NCBI RefSeq assembly: GCF_004010195.1
Contig: NC_057719.1
Location: 56,997,137 to 57,061,136, forward strand
From: Chiloscyllium plagiosum
Taxonomy: Eukaryota
DNA length: 64,000 nucleotides
Reading direction: 5' to 3'
The notes under the pieces are model-generated. The model worked only from the letters and a program-made list of their open reading frames with translations. It ran no database searches and was not told the DNA's origin. The translations under genes were made by a program, and so were the position numbers. How positions within the stretch are numbered: position 1 is the stretch's first letter; the number at the start of each line of letters is the position of its first letter. This document shows positions 8,428 through 47,241 of the stretch, one piece after another.

Positions 8428-8750
8428 GATTAGATTAGATTAGATTCCCTACAATGTGGAAAAAGGCCCTGCGGCCCAACAAGTCCACACCTACCCTCTG
8501 AAGAGTAACCCACCCAGACCAACTTCCCTTTGACGAATGCACCGAACACTATGGGCAATTTAGTGTTGCCAATCCACCTGACCTATACATCTTTGGACTG
8601 TGGGAGGAAAGCGGAGCAGCTGGAGGAAACCCATGCAGACACGGGGAGAATGTGCAAACTCCACACAGACATATGCCTGAGGCTGGAATCGAACCTGGGA
8701 CCCTGGTGCTGTGAGGCAGCAGTGCTAACCACTGAGCCACTGTGCCGCCC
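8428..8750 (-). mobile_element. HE1-type SINE nested in a minus CR1 3' end (~8215-8950)
   Basis: Reverse complement of 1248-1560 family. Confidence 0.9.
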
Positions 8751-14828: not shown

Positions 14829-15042
14829 AGAGTGTGGTGCTGGAAAAGCACAGCAGGTCAGGCAATATCCGAGGAGGAGAATCAAAATTTCGGGCATAAG
14901 CCCTTCATCAGGAATTCCTGGTAAAGGGCTTATGCCCGAAACATTGATTCTCCTGCTCCTTGGATGCTGCCTGACCTGCTGTGCTTTTCCAGCACCACAC
15001 TCTTCACTCTGATCTCCAGCATCTGCAGTCCTCACTTTCTCC
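14829..15042. mobile_element. Head-to-head pair of family B PLE pLTRs forming a ~175-nt palindrome
   Basis: 14829-14914 is the reverse complement of 14915-15003 around GGAATTCC; same unit as 27606 and 42336. Confidence 0.85.
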
Positions 15043-24750: not shown

Positions 24751-27100
24751 TGAACAGACTACAATAATCAAATATTAAGGGGAGTTAGAGGAGCGATCCA
24801 TTGCTGGAAACTGAATCCAGCCATGAACAGAATTTTAAAACAAGTTTTCTGTTTAACAGATTTTAATATTCCACTATTTTCGATGATTCTGAATTTCTAG
24901 ATTGGTCATTAAATTGATGTGTAAACCAGCAGCAGTGGTACGAATACACATCCTTCAATTACAATACATAAAGATAATATTTTACAAATTATTAAATGCA
25001 CTTACAACTCAAACATTTGATCCAGCTAAGCAAGTCCATGGTTTTGCATTCCATTGTCCTCCAAACTTTTTTCATCTAACTTCATTAAGCAAATCCTTCC
25101 AATCCTATCTATCTCTTGTGCTTACCTAACTTTCTTTTGAATGCATCTTCACTCACTGAGGTAACACAGCCCATATTCTAACTATTTTCTGGGTAAAGAA
25201 GTTCCATCTTAAATCCCTGTAATTAAGTATCTTAATTTACGATGTAAAGTTTTGGTCTTGCCAACAGGCAAAGTTAGTGGCTAGGTGGTGGATAGTGACA
25301 AATTCACCAGCCTACTAATCCAGAGCCCTGGGCTAATGTTCAGAGGACCACAGATTCAAATCCCATAGCAAGTGGTGAAATTTGAATTTGATAAAATTCT
25401 GCAATCAAAGTTCGTCTAATGGACACCATGTAACTACTACCAATTGGTATAATAAATAATGTTCTTTGGAGGAAAGGAATCTGCCAGATCTATATCTGCA
25501 GCATGTGGTTGACTCTTAACTACCCCTGAAAACCACTCAGTGAAGGGATGAGGGATGATCCCACTAACTAATTGAGAAAAGATAAACAGGTAGACAGTGA
25601 ACAGGTATGAGCCAGTGTAATAAAGTTAGCCAACATAAAAATCAATCAATTCATGCAATGAAACAGAAGCATTTCTGCCAATCGGGCACTTGATCAAACC
25701 AAGGATGGGCCTACTTTTGGTTTGAGGTGCCCGAGTTCAATTCCATCTGCTCTAGAAGTGTAAAATAACATCTCTGAAAAGCTTGATAAGAAAAATGGGT
25801 CAAATCAAGGATGCAAGAGTAAACTAAAATATCAAAATTAATTTTTAAATGATGGTACACAGAATCAGAGTGCAGTAAAAAGGAGAATTAAAGAAGTGAT
25901 TACACTCAAAGCGTCTTATAATCTGTGAAATTAAGAATTCAATTTCCATACAAATGCAAGAATTCCACACGTTCATTCATTCATTTATCCAGTAAAGTTC
26001 TGTAGAATCTTTTGATATTATTGCAAAATATTAAGCTTCTTTTCACTTATGAATAATATTAGCTCAAACTCACATAAACATGATGGTCAGATGCATCATT
26101 TTTCACCTGTTCCATTCCATTGTTAATTGACAATCAAGGATGTCTTTCAGAATTATCAAAACCGAAAGCTAAGGATTACAGAAAGAAGCAAGCATTGGGG
26201 ACAGACGAAGGCGAACATCAATTATATCAAAATTATGGCAAGATTAGATGCAGGAAGTATGTTCATTTTCGGGCAATTAACAAGAAAAAAACCCAATTAT
26301 CCAAAAGTTTAAATTAAAGTTACAGTTTCCGTAAGTTATATGCAAAGAAGATTGATAAACAACAGCTAACATTTAGTGTCTTTAACCTAGTGAAATGTTT
26401 CAATGTAATTACTGGAAAAAAAAACAAACATGCACCAAGTCAAAGCTGGAGGAATTAGAACAGATGACAAAAGAATTTCAGAATTTAAGGCTTAGGCTGG
26501 GTTGGAAAGTTTCAGTTTTTCCTCTGGGCAGAGAAGATTTATACATGCTTGAGATGTATAAAATTATGAAGTGCGTAGACAGGGAAGACAGAAATAAAAC
26601 TTTTCTAATTGATGGAATGATCAATGACTAGGGAGCACAGATTAAAGGTAAGGGGCAGGCAGTTTAAGGAGCTGAAGGAAAAACTTTGTCATCCAGAGGG
26701 TGGTGGGAATCTGGAACACACTGCCTGTAAGGGTGATAGAAGCAAAAACCATTAAATCATTTAAATTGTATTTAGATGTGCACTTGCAACATCAAGGCAT
26801 ATAAGTATATGGGCCAAGGTTCTAGAAAACTGGACTAGAATAATTCAGCAATTATTTTTAACCAGTGTGAATGAAATGTACCAGAGGGCCATTTTCCATG
26901 CTGCAGATGTCTATGATTCTGAACAGCTAAAAGCATGGCCACCAAGGCAAGAAGTCAGCACTGCAGGTTTGTGGGCCTCAGAGAATTTAGAAAGAGAGAG
27001 GGACAAGATTTGAGTTACTTGAGCAATGAGCAAACATTTTTCTGACTGTACAAAATTATGTCGTGGGGAACACAAGATTAGGACCATAACACCTCTTGTT

Positions 27101-27731
27101 TCTGATGAAGGGCTTTTGCCCGAAACGTCGATTTCGCTGCGCCTTGGATGCTGCCTGAATTGCTGTGCTCTTCCAGCACCACTAATCCAGAATCTGGTTT
27201 CCAGCATCTGCAGCCATTGTTTTTACCTCGTTGATTTTAACCCTACTGCGAATCCTCTTGCAAAGATGCCTACCTTGAAGAAGTTTTCCTCCTCTCTCTA
27301 CAAGAATCTCAGAGAGTCCCTCTCCCACTGCAACTCCCAGGTCATTTCCTCTGCCCTGAAGCTCTTCAACCATGTCGTGAAACAAACTCGCTACCACAGC
27401 CACATTTGCTTCCTCAGTGCCTGCCTCTGTAACCAACTCATCCCACACGGACTCCGGACCACCTTTAAACCAGCAGAGTTCGGACCCGAACAGGACAAAC
27501 AGTACAGACTCCAGACTACAGATTCAAAAACACCAGCAACAGTTCTCCTTCAAGATCCTCCGCTCCACGCTTGCAGCAATGCGCCGGCACCTAACAGCTT
27601 TATTCCTGATGAAGGGCTTTTGCCCGAAACGTCGATTTCGCTGCTCCTTGGATGCTGCCTGAACTGCTGTGCTCTTCCAGCACCATTAACCCAGAATCTG
27701 GTTTCCAGCATCTGCAATCATTGTTTTTACT
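27101..27731 (+). mobile_element. Penelope-like element: two direct pLTRs flanking the ORF 5' end
   Basis: Direct repeats 27102-27227 and 27606-27731; MPTLKK...RYHSHICFLSACLCNQLIPHGL typical of PLE N-terminus; 17-bp TSD with 2 mismatches (27084-27100, 27732-27748). Confidence 0.85.
27602..27637 (+). ncRNA. Minimal hammerhead ribozyme motif (family B; identical core at 27102-27129)
   Basis: CTGATGA-A-GGGC TTTT GCCC-GAAAC-GTC; stem I weak. Confidence 0.7.
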
Positions 27732-35158: not shown

Positions 35159-35383
35159 AACTCCCATCTCTCCCCGCTCCCCTGGCCCTGACAACACTCC
35201 TCTCTCCCCACTCTACCCACCACACCCTTCCCCCCCCCCAGACAACTCGCCTCTCTCCCCACATCCCGAGAGCATAAATTAATTTGATTCTTGGTACAAG
35301 AAACCAAAAGTTAATAGTTAACCTGTTGACTAGCCAATCTTCCTCTTGTCTGTTACTGAGAAAATCATAATGATGTCTTGCAG

Positions 35384-35474
35384 AAATGGATGATGAAGAC
35401 TGTGAAAGGAGGAGAACAGAGTGTTTAGATGAGATGTCCAATTTGGAGAAACAGTTTACAGATCTAAAAGAACA
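35384..35474 (+). CDS. BRMS1L: BRMS1L exon 2 (91 nt)
   Basis: (E)[29 protein letters not shown](Q); ttgcag acceptor, CA|GTAAGT donor (phase 2). Confidence 0.95.
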
Positions 35475-35616
35475 GTAAGTCTTAGTATAGTTTTCTATTT
35501 GGTGATACCTTATTTACAGCATTGCAAACTTCAGATCGATTTTGATTTTGTGCTAGACTGTTGGGCAACTCAAAGTTGTTTTGAACGTTTAGATTCTTTG
35601 GGTGTACTTTTGTAGC

Positions 35617-36065
35617 CATAGAGTTGTACAAAATGGAAACAAACCCTTCAGTCCAACTCGTCCATGCAGACCAAATATTCCAAACTGACATTGTCTCAGT
35701 TGGTAGCATTTGGCCCATATCCCTCTAAATTCTTTCATCATGTACCTATCCAGATGCCTTTTAAATGTTGTAATTGTACCAGCCTCCTCCACTCTTGTGG
35801 CAGCTCATTGCATACATGCACCATCCTCTGCATGAAAAATTTGTCCCTTTAATATCTTTCCACTTTCACCTTAAACCTATGCCCTCTAGTTTTGGACTCC
35901 CCTGTCCTGAGTAAAAGACCTTGGCTTTCATCCTATTCATGCCCCTCATGCCTTATAAATCTCTATAAGGTCACCTCTCAGCTTCTGACGTTCCTGGGAA
36001 AATAGCCCCAGCCTATTTAGCCTCACCCTGTAGATCAAACCCTCCGACCTCCTTGTAAATCTTTT
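35617..36065 (-). mobile_element. CR1 3' end
   Basis: AGTITTFKRHLDRYM; CR1 tail. Confidence 0.88.
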
Positions 36066-37079
36066 CAATCATATTCTTTTAAAGAAAGAAGCCATGAAAA
36101 TCACCCCTTTCTACTTGTTGTTTTACCATTAACTTGCATTCCAAAAAAAATCAATAAGAATAGTACCATGTTATAAAGGGTGCATATGTGAGCAAAATCT
36201 GTCCCCTCTGTGGGATATGATATGTATTCAAGTTGCTACTGAAGGGTGTGAAATCTCAACAATTAGAAACCCTGTGTCAGTGTCATATAAGGGTGAGTGT
36301 CAAAAGTAGGATACTGCATGTTCATGTTGGAAATCTGAAATAAAAACAGAAAATGCTGAAAATACATAACATGTTATAGGACCATCTTGGGAGATTGAGT
36401 TAATGCTTCAGGCCTTTCCAACTGAAGAACTTTAAAGAGATTGCACTTAACGTGTGTTGCTAGGTTAAATATTTTATGAATGTTTCATATCAAAATTTGA
36501 CAGGTAAATAAATAAGTTAGTAACTTGCCAACATGCTTAGTTGAAGTCTGCTTCATTGCCACAGTTGAAAGTCAGCTGTAATATTAAATTGCTGAAAATA
36601 AGTTTTGAACTATTGTAACATGGAAGTATCTAAATGCTCATCTGTTGCTATGTCTTGAACCTTTTTAACTGCTACGCAGATAAAATGACTATTACCAGAC
36701 TATGACATCCTACCACAATTTAACATACAGAAGTTATGATGGTGATGAGTTGTAGTAGTGGATATATTTAGTATATTCCACGATGCCAAGTTTGGGACTT
36801 TAGACCCCGTTTTAAGTTGCATCACTCAGTTTTATTTTGCTGTAAAGTTCTTGATGTAATGATGCCAGAATAATGCCGGTACTTCTGCTTTATGTCATTT
36901 GGTGCCCAGGCCTGTGTAGCATTGTGTGACTCAATTAGCTCCATTTGGTGCAAGGAGAGGCAACTCTTCCACAATCCAAGCAACAGCAATATTCTTAAAT
37001 TGAGCAGTTGTTTGTTTGCTGTTGTAAACAGTTTTCACACAGTATCCACTAGTGGACCTACATTTGTTTTTCATAGCAT

Positions 37080-37392
37080 CATAAAATCCCTACAGTGTGG
37101 AAGGTGACCGTTTGGTCCATCAAGTCTGCACCAACCCACTAAAGAGCGTCCCACTCACATTTACCCAATATTTACCATGGCTAAACCACTTAGTTTGCAT
37201 ATCCTTGAATGTTATGGGATAATTTAGCATGGCCAATCCACCTAACCTGCACATCTTTGGACTATGGGAGGAAACTTGAGCACCTGGCAGTAACCCACGC
37301 TGACATAGAGAGGATGTGCAAACTACATACAGTCACCCAAGACTGGAATCGAACCCGGGTCCCAGGCGCAGTGAAGCAGCCAAGTGCCGAGC
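37080..37392 (-). mobile_element. HE1-type SINE
   Basis: Same family, more diverged. Confidence 0.85.
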
Positions 37393-39019
37393 ATGAGGGA
37401 AGTAGAAAGAGTGAATACTTTTCTATGTTTTTAAGATTGCAACTTGGTATGTATGATATTTAAATTTACAGGGCATAATGTTTCCTTTCTGGGAAAGGCC
37501 CTGCGAAATCTTAGTATTACTGTTTCATTTTCTTGTCATGGGAAAATCTGATTATCTTTACATTGCATTTCTGAAAGTGCAATTTTACTTAAGGCTAAGT
37601 GTGGAATTATTGTACCTAACTGAACAAACAAAGGTCTATCCTGTGTAGTCCTCTATGGTGGATAACATGACCACATCTGCTCGAATTCTTTCTCTTGCTA
37701 TTGACTGCAGTCTTCTCTTTGCCAACTGTCTCAGACTAAACCTGATTTGTTTTCAATTTTGGTGCCTTATGTGATCTCGATTTGCACTTCATATCCATTG
37801 TATCACAGATTTTATAAAGCTGAGAGGAGTGTAGAAAGCAAAGTAAACATGAAGTTAAAAAAAGCAATTAGGTAAATGGAGGGTATGCAAAGAAACATTG
37901 GCTGAGGAAAATTCAGTAAAATCCTCTTTCTCTTATTGTACTGATAAAGGTAAAGGTTGGGTCTATTAGGTACATGCATGGTAATTCTTAAATGGGTGCA
38001 GAGAATGTGGGACAGGATTCTTAATTTTGATTCTGTCTTCACAGTGGAGAAGGATGATGTAGATATTTTAGTTGAAGAGAAGGAGTGTGAATGATTAGAT
38101 AAAATAAGCATATTTGAAACATGCAGACATGAGAAAAGATTGAATAGGCTAGCTATTTTTTCTTTAGAAGGAGGAGACTGAGGGGGTTGAATAGAGTGGA
38201 CAGTATTTAAAGTTGGTGCTTCTAGCAGAAAATAACTGCGAGGAGATACAGATTAAAGGTGATCGCTAGACACAAGGAAAATTTTTTTGTCCAGAGGGTG
38301 TGTGGAATTTGCTGTCCACTTTGGTGGTTGAGGCAGAAATCTCAACTTCGGAAAGATATATCTGGATCAGCATCCAAGATGTTGTAACCTGGAATGCTGC
38401 AGACCAAGTGCTGTATTAAAATGACCAACTAGTCTATTCAGCCAGCACAGACATGATGGGCTGAATGGTCTTTCACTGTGGTGTAACATTTCTTTCGTTA
38501 TCTTCTTACCTGCTTCTGGGATCCTCAATCATGCCTGTGTTTGTAGACATCCTTGTTCTGATTATATGACCTCTACAATCTACTGTGGGTAAGGATGTGG
38601 TTATTCAAAATCTTGTATTTGCATCAGATCCCATTCACTTATTGCCACTGTACTTGTTCAGCTATATTGGCTTCCAGTCAAACATTTTTGCATGAGAAAC
38701 TTTCTCTGGTTCTTGCAGGTTTTCTTTTAGTGCATGGCAAGTTCTTAATGCTTTCTCATATTTACATTCTGCCACTGTTACAGTTGCTTTTAAATCTCCC
38801 AATCCTCAAACATTAGAGAACCATCAGTTTGGGAATTTGGCAGTTACCCTTTGCTTCCAAAGTTCTCCTTGGCTTCCTCGCTTGCTTCACGTGTTTCTTA
38901 GCAGGTTGTGCGAAGGATTTCATGCTTTTTCAGGCTTCTGACATGAAATTCATGACAGATCCTTATTCCTATCTGGCCATCTCTATCTGAGTCTCTAGTC
39001 TTACTTTGAGTTCTTTTTA

Positions 39020-39354
39020 AGAATTAGAATTAGAATCCCTACAGTGTGGAAACAGGCCCTTCGGCCCAACAAGTTCAAACCGACCTCTGAAGAGTAACCC
39101 ACCCAGACCAATTCGCCCTGATTGATATACCTAACCTACAAATCCCTAAACACGATGGGCAGTTTAGCCTGTCCAATTCACCTGACCTGCACATCTTTGG
39201 ACTGTGGGAGGAAACCGGAGTACCAGGAGGAAACCCATGCAGACACTGGGAGAATGTGCAGACTCTACACAGACAATCAAACCCAGATCCCTGGTGCTGT
39301 GAGGCAGCAGTGCTAACCACTCAACCACCATGCCAACCACTGAGCCATCGTGCC
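39020..39354 (-). mobile_element. HE1-type SINE immediately upstream of the MHC fragment
   Basis: Same family; head partly duplicated. Confidence 0.9.
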
Positions 39355-39386
39355 TACATTCTTCCTACATTTTCAGATTGTCAAGT

Positions 39387-39654
39387 AAAGAACTGAGAGT
39401 GGTTGCCCCCATTGTGTTCTTTACCCGTCTGGGTGATTCCAACTGGCTGTCCTGTCTCGTCATTGGGTTTTACCCACAAGCCATCGAAGTGACTCTGCAG
39501 AGGGACAGAGTGTTGATTGATGAGACCTTGTCCACTTGGATCTTATCCAATCACAACGGGACCTACCAGATCTGGAAATGGGTACTGTTTGATCCGAAGG
39601 ATCAGGCCAAGTATTCCTGTCAGGTGGAGTACAGCGGGCTGGAAGTGATTTATG
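39387..39654 (+). pseudogene. Orphan MHC class I alpha3 (Ig C1-set) domain fragment; possible cassette exon 39377-39715
   Basis: KELRVVAPIVFFTRLGDSNWLSCLVIGFYPQAIEVTLQRD...LSNHNGTYQIWKW...KYSCQVEYSGL: C-x3-GFYP, N-x-[DN]-GTYQ and Y-x-C-x-V motifs; Cys pair 55 aa apart; no alpha1/alpha2/TM exons seen. Confidence 0.85.
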
Positions 39655-40069
39655 ATAAGACTGATTCTCATTGTCAGAGAGGAACCACACTCAGACTCGG
39701 ATCAGAGGAGGGAGGGTGAGTGCTGCGCATTTTCACCAGAACAGCCGAGGTTAGAAAAAGGAACAATATATAGAAAGGGGCTCGCACCATTTATAGGAAA
39801 CCATAATCAAGGCAGTTGTTCCTGGGAACTCCAGTACAACATGTATCAGTGTATCCTGGAATATTAGAGTACAGCAGCATTGGATAAATGCTGGGATATA
39901 ACAGAATGACAGGATCTGGTGTTTTGCAGGTAATTGTCACTCACTGTATCCGTGCATACACAGAATTAAGGCACCCAATGTAACCTGAAAACGCATTTCA
40001 TCCCAGTACCTGGCATATTCCAGGAATATTATAGTATTAAAGTATATGGTACATTGTACGTCTGCTATT

Positions 40070-43000
40070 GATGGTATTAGGCAAGAACTTTCGAAAGCTG
40101 ATTGGAGGCAGATGTTCGCAGGTAAAGGGACGGCTGGAAAATGGGAAGCCTTCAGAAATGAGATAACAAGAATCCAGAGAAAGTATATTCCTGTCAGGGT
40201 GAAAGGAAAGACTGGTAGCTATAGGGAATGCTGGGTGACTAAAGAAATTCAGGGTTTTGTTAAGAAAAAGAAGGAAGCATATGTCAGGTATAGACAGGAT
40301 AGAATGAGTGAATCCTTAGAAGAGTAAAAAGCAGTAGGGATAGCAGTAGGAGGGAAGTCAGGAGGGCAAAAAGATGGACATGAGATAGCATTGGCATAGA
40401 ATTAAGGAGAATCCAAAGGGTTTTTACAAATATATTAAGGACAAAAGGGTAACTTGAGAGAGAATAGGGCCCCTCAAAGATCAGTAAGGCAGCCTTTGTG
40501 TGGAGCACAGAAAATGGGGGAGATACTAAATGAATATTTTGCATCAGTATTTACTGTGGAATAGGATATGGAAGATATAGACTATAGGGAAATAGATGGT
40601 GACATCTTGCAAAATGTCCAGATTACAGAGGAGAAAGTGCTGGATGTCTTGAAACAGTTAAAAGTGGATAAATCCCCAGGACCTGATCAGGTGTACCTGA
40701 GAACTCTGTGGGAAGCTAGAGAAGTGATTGCTGGGCCTCTTGCTGAAATATTTGTATCATCGATAGTCACAGATAAGGAAGACTGGAGGTTGGCAAACGT
40801 GGTGCCACTGTTTAAGAAGGGCGGTAAAGACAAGCCAGGGAACTATAGACCGGTGAGCTTGACCTCAGTGGTGGGCAAGTTGTTGGAGGGAATCCTGAGG
40901 GATAGGATGTACATGTCCTGAGGGACAGGAAAGGCAAGGACTGATTAGGGATAGTCAACATGACTTTGTGTGTGGGAAATCATGTCTCACAAACTTGATT
41001 GAGTTTTTTGAATTGGCACCACTGACTCAAGGTGCTAGGAACCAGTGTTTGATTCCAGACTCGAGTGACTAAAAAGATGTCCTCAAGAATATGAATATCT
41101 CGATTACTCCCAGTGCTATAAGCTAGTGAGGGCAGGCATAGGAGGATAGAACAGATGAATGCATGGCTGAGGATCTGGTGTATGGGAGAAGGATTCACAT
41201 TTTTGGACCATTGGAATCTCTTTTGGGGTGGAAGTAACCTGTACAAGAAGGACGGATTGCACCTAAATTGGAAGGGGACTAATATACTGGCAGGGAAATT
41301 TGCTAGAACTGCTTGGGAGGATTTAAACTAGTAAGGTGGGGGAGTGGGGCCCAGGGAGATAGTGAGGAAAGAGATCAATCTGAGACTGGTACAGTTGAGA
41401 ACAGAAGTGAATGAAACAGTCGGGGCAGGCAGGGACAAGGTAGGACTAATAAATTAAACTGCATTTATTTCAATGTAAGGGGCAGAACAGGGAAGGCAGA
41501 TGAACTTGGGGCATGGTTAGGAACATGGGACTGGGATATCATAGCAATTACAGAAACATGGTTCAGGGATGGGCAGAACTGGCAGCTTAATGTTCCAGGA
41601 TACAAATGCTGCTGGAAGGATAGAAAGGGAGGCAAGAGAGGAGGGGGAGTGGCTTTTTGACAAGGGATAGCATTACAGCTGTACTGTGGGAGGACATTCC
41701 CGGAAATATATCCAGGAAAGTTATTTTGGTGGAACTGAGAAATAAGAAAGTGATGATCACCTTATTGGGATTGTATTATATTTGCCTGAATTGTCAGGGT
41801 GAACTTGAGAAACAAACTTGTGAGGAGATCTCAGCTATCTGTTAGAATAAGAGGGTGGTTATGGAAGGGGATTTAACTTTCCAAACATAGGCCGGTCTGC
41901 CATAGTGTTAAGGGTTTAGATGAAGAGGAATTTGATAAATGTGTACAAGAAAATTTTCTGATTCAGTATATGGTTGTACCTACAAGAGAAGATGCAAAAC
42001 TTGACCTGCACTTGGGAGATAAGGCCGGACAGGTGACTGAGGTGTGAGTGGGAGAGCACTTTAGGGCCAGCGACCATAATTCTATTAGTTTTAAAATAGT
42101 GATGGAAAAGGATAGACCAGATCTAAAAGTTGAAGTTCTAAATTGGAGAAAGGCCAATTTTGACAGTATTAGGCAAGAACTTACAAAAGCTGATTAGGGG
42201 CAAATGTTCGCAGGTAAAGGGACAGCTGGAAAATGGGAAGCCTTCAGAAATGAGATAACGAGAATCCAGAGAAAGTATATTCCTGTTCGGGTGAAAGGAA
42301 AAACTGGTAGAAATAGGGAATGGGCTTCCTGATTCCTGATGAAGGGCTTTTGCCTGAAACATCGATTTTCCTGCTCCTCAGATGCTGCCTGACCTGCTGT
42401 GCTTTTCCAGCACCACTCTAATCTAAACTCTGGTTTCCAGCATCTGCAGTCCTCACCTTTGTCCAGAAATAGGGAATGCTGGATGACTAAAGAAACTGAG
42501 GATTTGGTTAAGAAAAAGAAGGAAGCACATGTCAGGTATAGACAGGATAGATCGAGTGAACCCTGAGAGTATAAAGGCAGTAGGAGTATACTTAAGAGGG
42601 AAATCAGGAGGGAAAAAGCAGGAGGGAGATAGCTTGGCAAATAGAATTAAGGAGAATCTAAAGAGTTTTTACAAATATATTAGGGACAAAAGGGTAACTA
42701 GGGAGGGAATAAGGCCCCTCAAAAATCAGCAAGGCGGTCTTTGTGTGGAGCCACAGGAGATGAGGGAGATACTAAACGAGTATTTTGCATCAGTATTAAC
42801 TGTAAAAAGGACATGGAAGATATAGAATGTAGGGAAATAGATGGCGACATCTTGAAAAATGTCCATATTACAGAGGAGGAAGTGCTGGGTGTCTTGAAAC
42901 GCATCAAGGTAGATAAATCGTCAGGACCTAATCAGGTGAACCAGAGAACTCTGTGGTAAACTGGGGAAGTGATTGCTGGGCCTCTTACTGTGATATTTGT

Positions 43001-44446
43001 ATCATCAATAGTCACAGGTGAGGTGCTGGAAGACCGGAGGTTGGTTAACATGGTGTCACTGTTTAAGAAGGGTGGTAAGAACAAGCCAGGGAACTATAGA
43101 CCAGTGAGCCTGATGTCGATGGTGGGCAAGTTGTTGGAGGGAATCCTGAGGGACAGGATGTACATGTATTTGGAAAGGCAAGGGCTGATTAGGGATAGTC
43201 AACATGGCTTTGTGGGTGGGAACTCATGTCTCACAAATTTGATCGAGTTTTTGAAGAAGTAACAAAAGAGGATTGATGAGGGTAGAACGGTAGATGTGAT
43301 CTATATGGACTTCAGTAAGGCGTTTGACAGGGTTCCATATGGTAGACTGGTGAGCAGGGTTAGATCTCACGGAACACAGGGCGAACTAGCCATTTAGATA
43401 CACAACTGGCTCAAAAGTGGTGGTGGAGGGTTGTTTTTCAGATTGGAGGCATGTGATTCGTGAAGCGGCTCAAGGATTGGTGCCGGATCCACTAGTTTTC
43501 ATCATTTATTTAAATGATTTGGATGTGAGCATAAGAGGTATAGTTAGTAAGTTTACAGATGACACCAAAATTGGAGGTGTAGTGGACGGCGAAGAAGGTT
43601 ACCTCAGATTACAATGGGATCTTGATCAGATGGGCCCGTGGGCTGAGAAATGGCCGATGGAGTTTAATTGTTTAATTCAGATAAATGCGAGGTGCTGCAT
43701 TTTAGGAAAGCAAATCTTAGCAGGACTTATACACTTAATGGTAAGATCCTAGGGAGTGTTGCTGAACAAAGAGACCTTGGAGTGCAGGTAGATAGGATAG
43801 TGAAGAAGGCGTTTGGTATGCTTTCTTTTATTGGTCAGAGTATTGCGTACAGGAGTTGGGGTCATGTTGCGGCTGTACAGGGTATTGGTTAGACCACTGT
43901 TGGAATATTGCGTGCAATTTTGGACTCCTTCCTATTTGGAAGGATGTTGTGAAACTTGAAAGGGTTCAGAAAAGATTAAAAGGATGTTGCCAGGGTTGGA
44001 GGATCTGAGCAACAGGGAGAGACTGAACAGGCTGGGGCTGAATTCCCTGGAGTGTCGGAGGCTGAGGGGTGACCTTATAGAGGTTTACAAAATTATGAGA
44101 GGCGTGGATAGGATAAATAGGCAAAGTCTTTTCACTGGGGTGGAGGTGTCCAGAACTAGAGGGCAAAGGTTTAGGGTGAGAGGGGAAAGATATAAGAGAC
44201 CTTAGGGGCAACGTTTTCACGCAGAGGGTGCTATGTGTATGGAATGAGCTGCTAGAGAAAGTGGTGGAGGCTGGTACAATTGCAACATTTAAGAGGCATT
44301 TGGATGGGTATATGAATAGGAAGGGTTTGGAAGGATATGGACCGGGTGCTAGTAGGTGGGACTAGATTGGGTTGGGATATCTGGACGGCATGGACGGGTT
44401 GGACCGAAGGGTCTGTTTTCGTGCTGTACATTTCTATGACTCTAAC
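40070..44446 (+). mobile_element. CR1 composite: ORF2 fragment (40070-41010) followed by ORF1 end + ORF2 + 3'UTR (41011-44446)
   Basis: SGNH-esterase-like ORF1 end (DGLHLNWKGTNILAG), APE and RT motifs with stops/frameshifts. Confidence 0.92.
42323..42464 (+). mobile_element. 142-nt solo family B pLTR insertion within CR1 ORF2
   Basis: Perfect 14-bp TSD agaaatagggaatg (42309-42322, 42465-42478); CTGATGA...GAAAC core. Confidence 0.9.
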
Positions 44447-46717: not shown

Positions 46718-47018
46718 GGTGGCTCATTGGTTAGCACTACTGCCTCACAGCTCCAGGGACCCAGGTTCGATTCCAGCCTTGGGCAACTGTCTGTGTGGAG
46801 TTTGCACATTCTCCCAGTGTCTGCGTGGGTTTTTTGCAGGTGCTCTGATTTCCTCCCACACTCCAAAGATGTGCAGGTTAGGTGAAAAGACCATGCTAAA
46901 TTGCCCATGGTATTGAGTGTCAGAGGAAAATGGGTCTTGGTGGGTTACTCTTCGGAGGGTCAGTGTGGACTTGTTGGGCCGAAGGGCCTGTTTCCACACT
47001 GTAGGGAATCTAATCTAA
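46718..47018 (+). mobile_element. HE1-type SINE
   Basis: A/B boxes, aatct tail. Confidence 0.9.
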
Positions 47019-47113: not shown

Positions 47114-47241
47114 GTTATATAGGGAAAGGTTAAGTCAAGTGGAAGCAAAACTTGAGGAAGTTATAGCAGGAAAGGCTCCTGAATATTTGGAACCATTAGC
47201 AACTCTACAAGAGAATATGCAAATTCGAACAAAGGTTGCAG
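47114..47241 (+). CDS. BRMS1L: BRMS1L exon 3 (128 nt)
   Basis: [42 protein letters not shown](G); canonical AG/GT. Confidence 0.95.

What the first reader, a model, noticed from the sequence alone, without database searches (positions are those of the whole stretch)
39377..39715. Orphan MHC class I alpha3 domain forms a frame-compatible candidate cassette exon inside BRMS1L intron 2
Seen: a stop-free Ig C1-set segment in sense orientation, preceded by a pyrimidine tract plus AG (cattcttcctacattttcag, AG 39375-76) and followed by GG|GTGAGT (39716). It is 339 nt (113 codons) and phase 2 at both ends. BRMS1L intron 2 is also phase 2 (CA|G). Inclusion gives ...DLKEQ-LSSKELRVVAP...SCLVIGFYP...YSCQVEYSGL...SEEGG-LYRERL with no stop. 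Known: BRMS1L is a nuclear Sin3/HDAC subunit with no Ig domain, and the RALGAPA1-BRMS1L locus is not part of the MHC in human. Inference: possible exonisation making a chromatin-factor/MHC-Ig chimera with the domain placed in the N-terminal coiled coil. Caveats: frame match can be chance, and substitutions at typical positions (CxVxH to Y, P to S, G to W) suggest decay.
Basis: partly seen in the sequence, partly recalled or inferred. Interest (0 to 1): 0.85.

Follow-up and report, generated by a model that had tools for sequence, protein, structure and literature searches.

The report
Stray MHC class I fragment in intron
A decaying, single-copy piece of a shark MHC class I gene sits inside an intron of a BRMS1-like chromatin gene and happens to look like an in-frame exon, but nothing shows that it is used.

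Summary
Window 39377-39715 is a stop-free 339-nt segment between a pyrimidine tract plus AG and GG|GTGAGT. It is in frame with the flanking Sds3-family (BRMS1-like) exons and encodes a C1-set domain whose best solved match is an MHC class I heavy chain (E 5e-22).

The segment is composite, not a native exon. It holds the last codons of the alpha2 exon fused without an intron to alpha3 (39403-39654), then 61 nt that match the start of the following intron in a Chiloscyllium gene. The native donor GT reads AT. Both candidate splice sites lie outside the native exon.

No other MHC class I part lies in the 64 kb. The piece is single copy in DNA reads. It differs at 4 of 21 highly conserved columns, where 10 of its 11 close relatives differ at none. 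It also carries a 4-codon deletion.

My reading: a partly spliced, RNA-derived pseudogene fragment of a non-classical shark class I lineage, decaying neutrally, and a fortuitous pseudo-exon. RNA runs gave no read on it, but they gave none on host exon 2 either, so exonisation is untested rather than refuted. Another first-reader note of this scan covers the same stretch. Interest is low to moderate.

The parts
35384..35474 (+).
   Evidence: Read directly. Acceptor and donor positions were listed.
39023..39356 (-). SINE copy, with its head next to the pyrimidine tract
   Evidence: 69-78% alike over more than 300 nt to 8434-8746, 46718-47018 and 1258-1551. Depth in DNA contigs is 10^5-10^6 against 11-18 for unique DNA. 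The right edge near 39356 is my reading of the sequence.
39357..39376 (+). Pyrimidine tract plus AG: candidate acceptor, outside the MHC homology
   Evidence: 16 of 20 pyrimidines plus YAG. The tblastn homology starts at 39372-39387.
39377..39715 (+).
39387..39402 (+). Tail of the alpha2 exon (K E L R V plus the first base of the split codon), joined to alpha3 with no intron
   Evidence: The tail aligns to RELRV of full-length relatives. Gene models P0004, P0010 and P0009 place the alpha3 exon start in the codon before 'AP'. The window has gg, not ag, at 39401-02.
39403..39654 (+). Homologue of the native alpha3 exon (phase 1 at both ends), with a 12-nt in-frame deletion near its end
   Evidence: 74-79% identity to shark class I alpha3. 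The alignment shows the missing EEKL/KETL block.
39655..39675 (+). Start of the intron that follows alpha3: the native donor position reads AT instead of GT, and the next six codons (KTDSHC) equal the read-through tail of a Chiloscyllium gene model
   Evidence: P0042 ends ...VVIYGKTDSHC. The window reads tat gat aag act gat tct cat tgt.
39676..40067 (+). Unique sequence, probably more of that intron; no transmembrane or cytoplasmic exon in it
   Evidence: No copy elsewhere in the window. A single-copy DNA contig spans 39325-39967. Tails of relatives find nothing better than E 0.065, and maximum hydropathy is 1.29 against 3.2-3.5.
39716..39721 (+). GTGAGT: candidate donor, inside the intron-derived part
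   Evidence: 8 of 9 matches to MAG|GTRAGT.
40068..41010 (+). 5'-truncated LINE-like copy that bounds the unique fragment
   Evidence: 85-91% alike to 42160-43252. Two other copies continue upstream of the point matching 40068. A weak RVT_1 match lies in the sister copy.
47114..47241 (+).

Best explanation
This is a non-functional, single-copy fragment of a non-classical shark MHC class I gene. It reached the intron of a BRMS1-like gene through an RNA intermediate. The source was a partly spliced transcript: the alpha2/alpha3 intron had been removed and the intron after alpha3 was retained. The copy is truncated at the 5' end inside the last codons of alpha2. Its 3' side is bounded by a LINE copy. 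Since then it has drifted neutrally. Its own donor is dead, it has a 12-nt deletion, and it has replacements at residues that its relatives keep. A pyrimidine tract plus AG in the flank and a GTGAGT in the retained intron happen to frame it as a 339-nt, frame-preserving pseudo-exon. I infer that the spliceosome ignores it or uses it at most at trace level, and that no working chimera is made. Shown here: identity, anatomy, orphan state, single copy, excess of private changes. Inferred: the RNA route and the lack of use.
For: Identity: C1-set E 3.5e-12; MHC class I chain 6lup_A E 5.4e-22. Of 482 library hits, the closest are shark class I proteins at 79, 78 and 74% identity, against 51% for the Triakis 'MHC class I antigen'. 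Spliced 5' junction: KELRV lies directly before VAP, while three gene models of relatives put an exon border there. Unspliced 3' side: AT stands at the donor place, followed by KTDSHC as in P0042. No TM or cytoplasmic part follows. Orphan: with 161 class I-related queries, nothing else in the 64 kb scored better than E 0.003. Single copy: one DNA contig of 643 nt at depth 11.3 with 2 differences. Decay: 4 of 21 columns conserved at 90% or more are changed. Of 11 relatives at 69% identity or above, 10 have 0 changes and 1 has 1 change. 8 of 10 private replacements within the alpha2-tail/alpha3 part fit a single C>T or G>A step. The open frame needs no selection. RNA: depth 0 on 39500-39899 in X5 and X7.
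Against: The splice-like sites are better on a crude scale than those of the two real host exons: acceptor 16/20 against 9/20 and 13/20, donor 8/9 against 7/9. At strict thresholds this is the only open, frame-preserving pair in the intron, 1 of 7 pairs. The frame is open and the one deletion is a multiple of three. The RNA test was void: exon 2 had depth 0 in the RNA runs and 0.69 in the DNA run (probably the human-likeness filter). 97% of the X5 reads laid ran on into unlike sequence, so they come from other repeat copies. X6 laid nothing. I had no genomic DNA of any parent gene, so intron positions rest on protein models. No poly(A) tract or target-site duplication was found. Two weak colinear matches in another frame (EPHSDS at 39682, IYRKG at 39766; E 0.4-1.0) could hint at a connecting-peptide exon.
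Confidence: 0.7

Rival explanations
1. It is a real alternative cassette exon. The spliceosome includes the 339 nt in some tissues and produces a BRMS1-like protein with an Ig domain inserted in its N-terminal coiled coil.
For: Strong acceptor and donor, and a length of 3n in the right phase with no stop. It is the only such pair in the intron at strict thresholds. Both domain cysteines are kept.
Against: No RNA read lies on it, though the test was weak. Conserved residues are lost and four codons at the start of the last strand are deleted. An Ig C1 domain needs a disulfide formed in the secretory path, and the host protein has no signal peptide and is nuclear (established knowledge). The insert would break the coiled coil that 2xus covers. 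Frame match given two sites is about 1 in 9 by chance.
Confidence: 0.1
2. It is a DNA-level copy: a segmental duplication, a transposon capture, or an in-place relic of a class I gene. The parent gene had already lost the alpha2/alpha3 intron.
For: Intron sequence is present on the 3' side. No poly(A) tract or target-site duplication was seen. TEs lie on both flanks. Human chromosome 14 holds a minor MHC paralogous region according to passages of PMC10751288.
Against: Three gene models of relatives have an exon border exactly where the window has none. 74-79% identity to living shark lineages and a shared intron start with Chiloscyllium argue against an ancient relic. No alpha1, alpha2 or TM remnant lies within 64 kb.
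Confidence: 0.12
3. It is a fully processed retrocopy. What follows alpha3 is a much-decayed connecting-peptide/TM exon rather than intron.
For: K-TDS-H-Q loosely resembles PKSHSQ / PKADS of relatives. In the +1 frame, EPHSDS and IYRKG lie about 28 codons apart, as EPKS...IYKKG do in relatives.
Against: No hydrophobic stretch exists in any frame: maximum 1.29 against 3.2-3.5. All these matches have E of 0.38 or worse in a 471-nt target. The tail of P0042 reads G-K = GGTAAG, a textbook donor read through. All working relatives have P as the first full residue of that exon, and the window and P0042 do not.
Confidence: 0.08
4. It is an exon of an unannotated nested gene that uses the Ig domain with other, non-MHC exons.
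For: The Ig domain is open with its cysteines intact, and splice-like sites are present.
Against: No RNA coverage. No signal-peptide, TM or further Ig exon was detected nearby. Signs of decay are present.
Confidence: 0.02

Closest known systems
Multicopy non-classical-type MHC class I genes of sharks (Chiloscyllium punctatum GCC37512.1 / GCC37514.1, Hemiscyllium ocellatum XP_060707073.1, Mustelus asterias XP_078073688.1 and its 11-member cluster)
   Same: The alpha3 C1-set domain is 74-79% identical. The alpha2 tail RELRV/KELRV is the same. The intron start after alpha3 matches GCC37514.1.
   Different: Only about 270 nt of coding sequence is present. There is no leader, alpha1, bulk of alpha2, TM or tail. 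The native donor is dead, 4 codons are deleted, and 4 of 21 conserved columns are changed. [quoted passage not shown] I could not assign a lineage name (UBA, UEA or other).
Processed and semi-processed retro-pseudogenes (general class; the rodent preproinsulin I example is recalled, not from a call)
   Same: One exon-exon junction without an intron, 5' truncation, single copy, neutral decay, and a location unlinked to the parent cluster.
   Different: The next intron is retained. No poly(A) tract or target-site duplication was found. The 3' end is cut by or fused to a LINE copy.
Intronic pseudo-exons and exonised insertions (general class, such as exonised SINEs; recalled)
   Same: An inserted sequence in sense orientation with good AG and GT signals and a frame-preserving length.
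   Different: No transcript evidence exists here. The insert is a gene fragment, not a transposon.
Chimeric retrocopies made by LINE reverse-transcriptase template switching (recalled from the literature, not read here)
   Same: A piece of a cellular RNA lies directly 5' of a 5'-truncated LINE copy on the same strand.
   Different: It could not be tested. This LINE copy is also cut at 41010 by another copy, so no common target-site duplication can be sought.

Membership tests
Ig C1-set domain / MHC class I alpha3 | Profile match above the curated cut-off | tested here: met
   PF07654 scores 46.9 bits against a cut-off of 21, E 3.5e-12.
Ig C1-set domain / MHC class I alpha3 | Closest relatives are class I heavy chains, not beta2-microglobulin, class II or Ig/TCR constant domains | tested here: met
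   6lup_A 'MHC class I protein' scores E 5.4e-22, and the next hits are MR1 and HLA chains. The named top library hits are shark class I proteins.
Ig C1-set domain / MHC class I alpha3 | The two cysteines of the intradomain disulfide | tested here: met
   C26 and C81 are kept (invariant or nearly invariant columns).
Working MHC class I gene | Alpha1 and alpha2 exons, TM and cytoplasmic exons nearby | tested here: not met
   tblastn with 161 proteins finds nothing else in 64 kb better than E 0.003. No tail or TM lies downstream.
Working MHC class I gene | Native phase-1 acceptor and donor around alpha3 | tested here: not met
   gg instead of ag stands before 39403, and AT instead of GT stands at 39655-56. 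The borders come from the models.
Working MHC class I gene | Conserved alpha3 residues kept | tested here: not met
   4 of 21 conserved columns are changed, against 0 in 10 of 11 close relatives. There is a 4-codon deletion.
Processed retro-pseudogene | Exon-exon junctions without introns | tested here: inconclusive
   The alpha2/alpha3 junction has no intron. The intron after alpha3 appears to be retained.
Processed retro-pseudogene | Poly(A) tract and target-site duplication | tested here: not met
   I see no A-run in 39655-40067. The 3' end is not definable because of the LINE copies, so duplications could not be sought.
Cassette exon of the host gene | Usable AG and GT, with a length and phase that keep the frame | tested here: met
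Cassette exon of the host gene | Junction reads to the flanking exons | tested here: inconclusive
   Depth is 0 on 39500-39899 in two RNA runs and a third laid nothing. Exon 2 is also at 0, so there is no positive control.
Cassette exon of the host gene | Kept with open frame and sites in sister species | not testable with these tools

The most novel reading that the evidence does not exclude
The pseudo-exon is in fact spliced, perhaps in few tissues, into the BRMS1-like mRNA. This would give an in-frame Sin3/HDAC-subunit protein carrying an MHC class I Ig domain: a domain gained by a nuclear chromatin factor from an immune gene through a retro-copied, partly spliced transcript. Even unused, it would be an MHC class I-derived sequence outside the elasmobranch MHC, where a published survey reported no MHC-Ib genes.
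Probability: 0.07. Interest if true: 0.7.

Novelty: new member of a known kind. Interest (0 to 1): 0.25.

Why it matters
If it were used, it would be a clear case of exon shuffling by retrocopy, placing an immune Ig domain in a chromatin regulator. As it stands it is a small footnote. It shows that shark class I transcripts were occasionally copied out of the MHC, despite the report that elasmobranch class I genes all map to the MHC. It is also a trap for annotation: gene predictors could add this open, well-flanked 113-codon segment to the host gene model. The fragment could serve as a neutral marker to date the parent lineage once parent DNA is compared.

Tried and rejected

Short relatives: the search for homologous proteins with the 113 aa (which sees only proteins of 62-198 aa) found 5 candidates and none at E 1e-5 or better. 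This says nothing about longer proteins, such as a host isoform with the insert.

Scan notes: the look-up by sequence was blank, and the word BRMS1L occurs in no note.

LINE ORFs: I first sent them to NCBIfam by mistake and got no hits. I then sent them to Pfam, where 1 of 4 gave a weak RVT_1 match below cut-off.

Fully processed retrocopy: considered because of loose CP-like matches. Set aside because no TM exists in any frame and all matches have E of 0.38 or worse.

LINE template-switch chimera: attractive, since a 5'-truncated LINE sits on the same strand at 40068. It is untestable here because that copy is cut again at 41010.

Ancient relic in an MHC paralogous region (MHCpara-14, passages): rejected because of the spliced junction and the 74-79% identity to living shark lineages.

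A search for BRMS1L with 'MHC class I' and 'exonization' listed 8 of 52 papers, none of the 8 holding BRMS1L. So I found no printed account of such a chimera in that library. Supplements were closed. Those of PMC10751288 may list class I fragments outside the MHC, and I could not see them.

Structure prediction was not run, because it would not separate a pseudogene from a working domain.

Full report
WHAT IS THERE. A pyrimidine tract and AG (39375-76) precede it and GG|GTGAGT (GT at 39716-17) follows. The frame is open from 39330 to the TGA at 39717-19. The upstream host exon ends GAA CA|gt at 35474. The downstream one starts ag|G TTA TAT at 47114. The intron is therefore phase 2, and a 339-nt insert read in the open frame keeps the frame. 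I read this by eye. The downstream host exon matches Pfam Sds3-like (E 1.3e-5, 25.8 bits, cut-off 25.4) and weakly matches the BRMS1 coiled coil 2xus (E 0.84). The upstream exon (29 aa) matched nothing. The host is thus a BRMS1-family gene.

IDENTITY. The 113 codons match Pfam C1-set (E 3.5e-12). Among solved structures they best match an 'MHC class I protein', 6lup_A (E 5.4e-22, residues 4-88 on chain 175-259). A HMMER scan of 1.84 billion representatives gave 482 hits at E 1e-3 or better. The closest are 79% (P0004, Chiloscyllium punctatum GCC37512.1), 78% (P0002, Hemiscyllium ocellatum XP_060707073.1), 74% (P0003, Mustelus asterias XP_078073688.1, one of 11 cluster members on one contig) and 69% (Heterodontus). 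The Triakis scyllium 'MHC class I antigen' (P0015) is at 51%. The fragment therefore belongs to a multicopy shark class I lineage that differs from the Triakis type. I could not put a lineage name on it.

ANATOMY. The segment is not a native exon.

(a) 5' side. In full-length relatives the alpha2 domain ends ...YGQRELRV and alpha3 goes on VAPxVSF. Three gene models that skip alpha2 (P0004, P0010, P0009) all join another exon in the codon just before 'AP'. That is the usual phase-1 alpha3 exon start, which is established knowledge of class I gene structure. In the window this point is 39403. The two bases before it are gg, not ag. The 16 nt upstream encode K-E-L-R-V, the alpha2 tail. The alpha2/alpha3 junction is therefore the spliced one.

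(b) 3' side. Relatives end the exon at ...VVIY plus one base G (isoforms P0152 and P0021 switch exon there). In the window that is 39654. The next two bases are AT where a donor GT should be. The next six codons, KTDSHC, are identical to the end of the Chiloscyllium model P0042...VVIYGKTDSHC. There G-K is what GGTAAG gives when a predictor reads through a donor. So the start of the following intron is retained and its donor is dead. Another first-reader note of this scan (s1-883727) had proposed both points for the same stretch. I tested them as above.

(c) Downstream of 39655. No connecting-peptide, TM or cytoplasmic part of 15 relatives' tails is found in 39640-40110 (best E 0.065). No frame has a hydrophobic stretch: the maximum 19-residue Kyte-Doolittle mean is 1.29, against 3.2-3.5 in relatives.

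(d) Flanks. A SINE copy (39023 to about 39356, minus strand) lies on the left. A 5'-truncated LINE-like copy starts at 40068 on the right. The 710 nt between them are unique in the window.

(e) Candidate splice sites. The acceptor lies in the 20 nt between SINE and MHC homology. The donor lies in the intron-derived part. Neither is native.

ORPHAN AND SINGLE COPY. tblastn of 161 class I-related proteins against the window found nothing outside this spot better than E 0.003 (a 28-residue match on the other strand). In DNA run X1, one contig of 643 nt covers 39325-39967 at depth 11.3 with two differences. These are 39485 C>T, which by my reading of the codon is ATC to ATT and silent, and 39834 G>A. 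Neighbouring unique DNA has depth 9-18 and the repeats 10^5-10^6. The contigs stop in the repeats, so they confirm the fragment itself but not its linkage to the host exons.

DECAY. In an alignment with 26 relatives (45% identity or more), 21 columns are at least 90% conserved. The window departs at 4 of them (T>I, G>W, P>S, D>N). Of 11 relatives at 69% identity or more, 10 depart at 0 and one at 1. Only one distant sequence also reaches 4. Against eight close relatives there are 10 private replacements within the alpha2 tail and alpha3. Eight fit a single C>T or G>A step, one fits G>T, and one needs two steps. Four codons (EEKL/KETL) are missing before the last strand. The open frame is no argument for selection. 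With random substitutions at 5, 10 and 15% of sites, 45, 22 and 12% of trials stay stop-free.

SPLICE-LIKE SIGNALS. On a crude scale (pyrimidines in 20 nt plus YAG; matches to MAG|GTRAGT), the candidate scores 16/20 and 8/9. The real host sites score 9/20 and 13/20 for the acceptors and 7/9 for both donors. At thresholds 14/20 and 8/9 the intron has 27 acceptors, 8 donors and 7 pairs 50-500 nt apart. One of these, this one, is open and frame-preserving. At 12/20 and 6/9 it is one of 13 among 339 pairs. By sequence it is therefore a credible pseudo-exon. This counts against my reading and I report it as such.

RNA. The run search found no RNA holder of the 339 nt. Four runs of unknown kind from one study hold 83-89% of its words. 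I laid 35300-41299, with exon 2 included as control, on X5 and X6 (single-cell polyA RNA, raw reads), X7 (contigs, RNA by guess) and X1 (DNA contigs).
- X5: 12,955,460 records were read, about 2% of the run, and 1015 were laid. Of these, 994 were only partly on the stretch, and 97% of what was laid ran on into unlike sequence. They are reads of other repeat copies.
- Depth: 0 in bins 39500-39699 and 39700-39899 in X5 and X7. X6 laid nothing.
- Joints and loose ends: none at 39377 or 39715 are among the 15 joints and 18 loose ends shown. 309 and 838 more were not shown, but with zero depth none can have real support.
- Control: exon 2 (bin 35300-35499) is also 0 in the RNA runs and 0.69 in the DNA run, probably the filter for human-like reads.
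There is thus no positive control. Exonisation is unsupported but not refuted.

HOW IT MOST LIKELY CAME ABOUT AND WORKS. Shown: a class I fragment with one spliced junction and one retained intron start, orphan, single copy, with excess change at conserved sites. Inferred: a partly spliced class I transcript was reverse-transcribed and inserted in sense orientation into the host intron. This may have happened by template switching from a LINE RNA, since a 5'-truncated LINE follows on the same strand. That idea is recalled from the literature and could not be tested, because the LINE copy is cut again at 41010. The fragment then drifted. I judge that it is not used. An Ig C1 domain depends on a disulfide made in the secretory pathway. 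The host is a nuclear protein without a signal peptide, and the insert would split its N-terminal coiled coil (established knowledge; for the coiled-coil match).

COMPARISON WITH WHAT IS KNOWN. [quoted passage not shown] They also state that multicopy UBA and UEA clusters lie within it. A dispersed fragment does not contradict a statement about genes, but it is an out-of-MHC class I sequence. The same paper mentions a class I gene in the MHCpara-14 equivalent of amphibians and reptiles. The spliced junction and the high identity to living shark genes speak against a relic of that kind here. I saw only passages of this paper. Its supplements were closed and may list such fragments. All other papers were seen as search listings only.

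VERDICT. It is best filed as a semi-processed class I pseudogene fragment that forms a pseudo-exon, a new member of a known kind. Confidence is 0.7 and interest 0.25.

Noticed in passing
window 38900-39099: In single-cell polyA RNA run X5 a pile of reads (mean depth 117, first mate on +) lies on the tail end of the SINE copy. 427 loose ends at 39040 start with a T-run. About 400 reads differ at 39075 and 39078, so they are polyadenylated transcripts of other copies of this SINE family, not of this locus.
   Followed up: no
window 46718-47018: Another copy of the same SINE family (76% alike to 39024-39329, opposite orientation) ends about 95 nt before the acceptor of the host exon at 47114.
   Followed up: no
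window 40068-41010 and 41094-44444: Two LINE-like copies lie on the + strand. The second is longer and is interrupted at 42332-42464 by a short repeat also found at 14831-15042 and 27099-27719. Many copies in the window share a 3' end near 44440. RVT_1 scores only 25.4 bits, below the cut-off.
   Followed up: partly
window 39485 and 39834: Two single-base differences between the window and DNA run X1 lie inside the fragment. The first is silent in the Ig frame (ATC/ATT). This is ordinary polymorphism or a difference between individuals.
   Followed up: no
window 35300-35499: Host exon 2 has depth 0.69 in the DNA run, where neighbouring unique DNA has 9-18. This is probably the tool's filter for human-like reads, so depth over conserved exons cannot serve as a control here.
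   Followed up: no
same genome, other pieces (notes s1-885878, s1-886197): Other first-reader notes mention a class I-like gene with alpha2 followed directly by the TM exon (no alpha3), and a decayed class I-like gene next to IgH. I saw only their titles. The second may matter for the MHCpara-14 question raised in PMC10751288.
   Followed up: no
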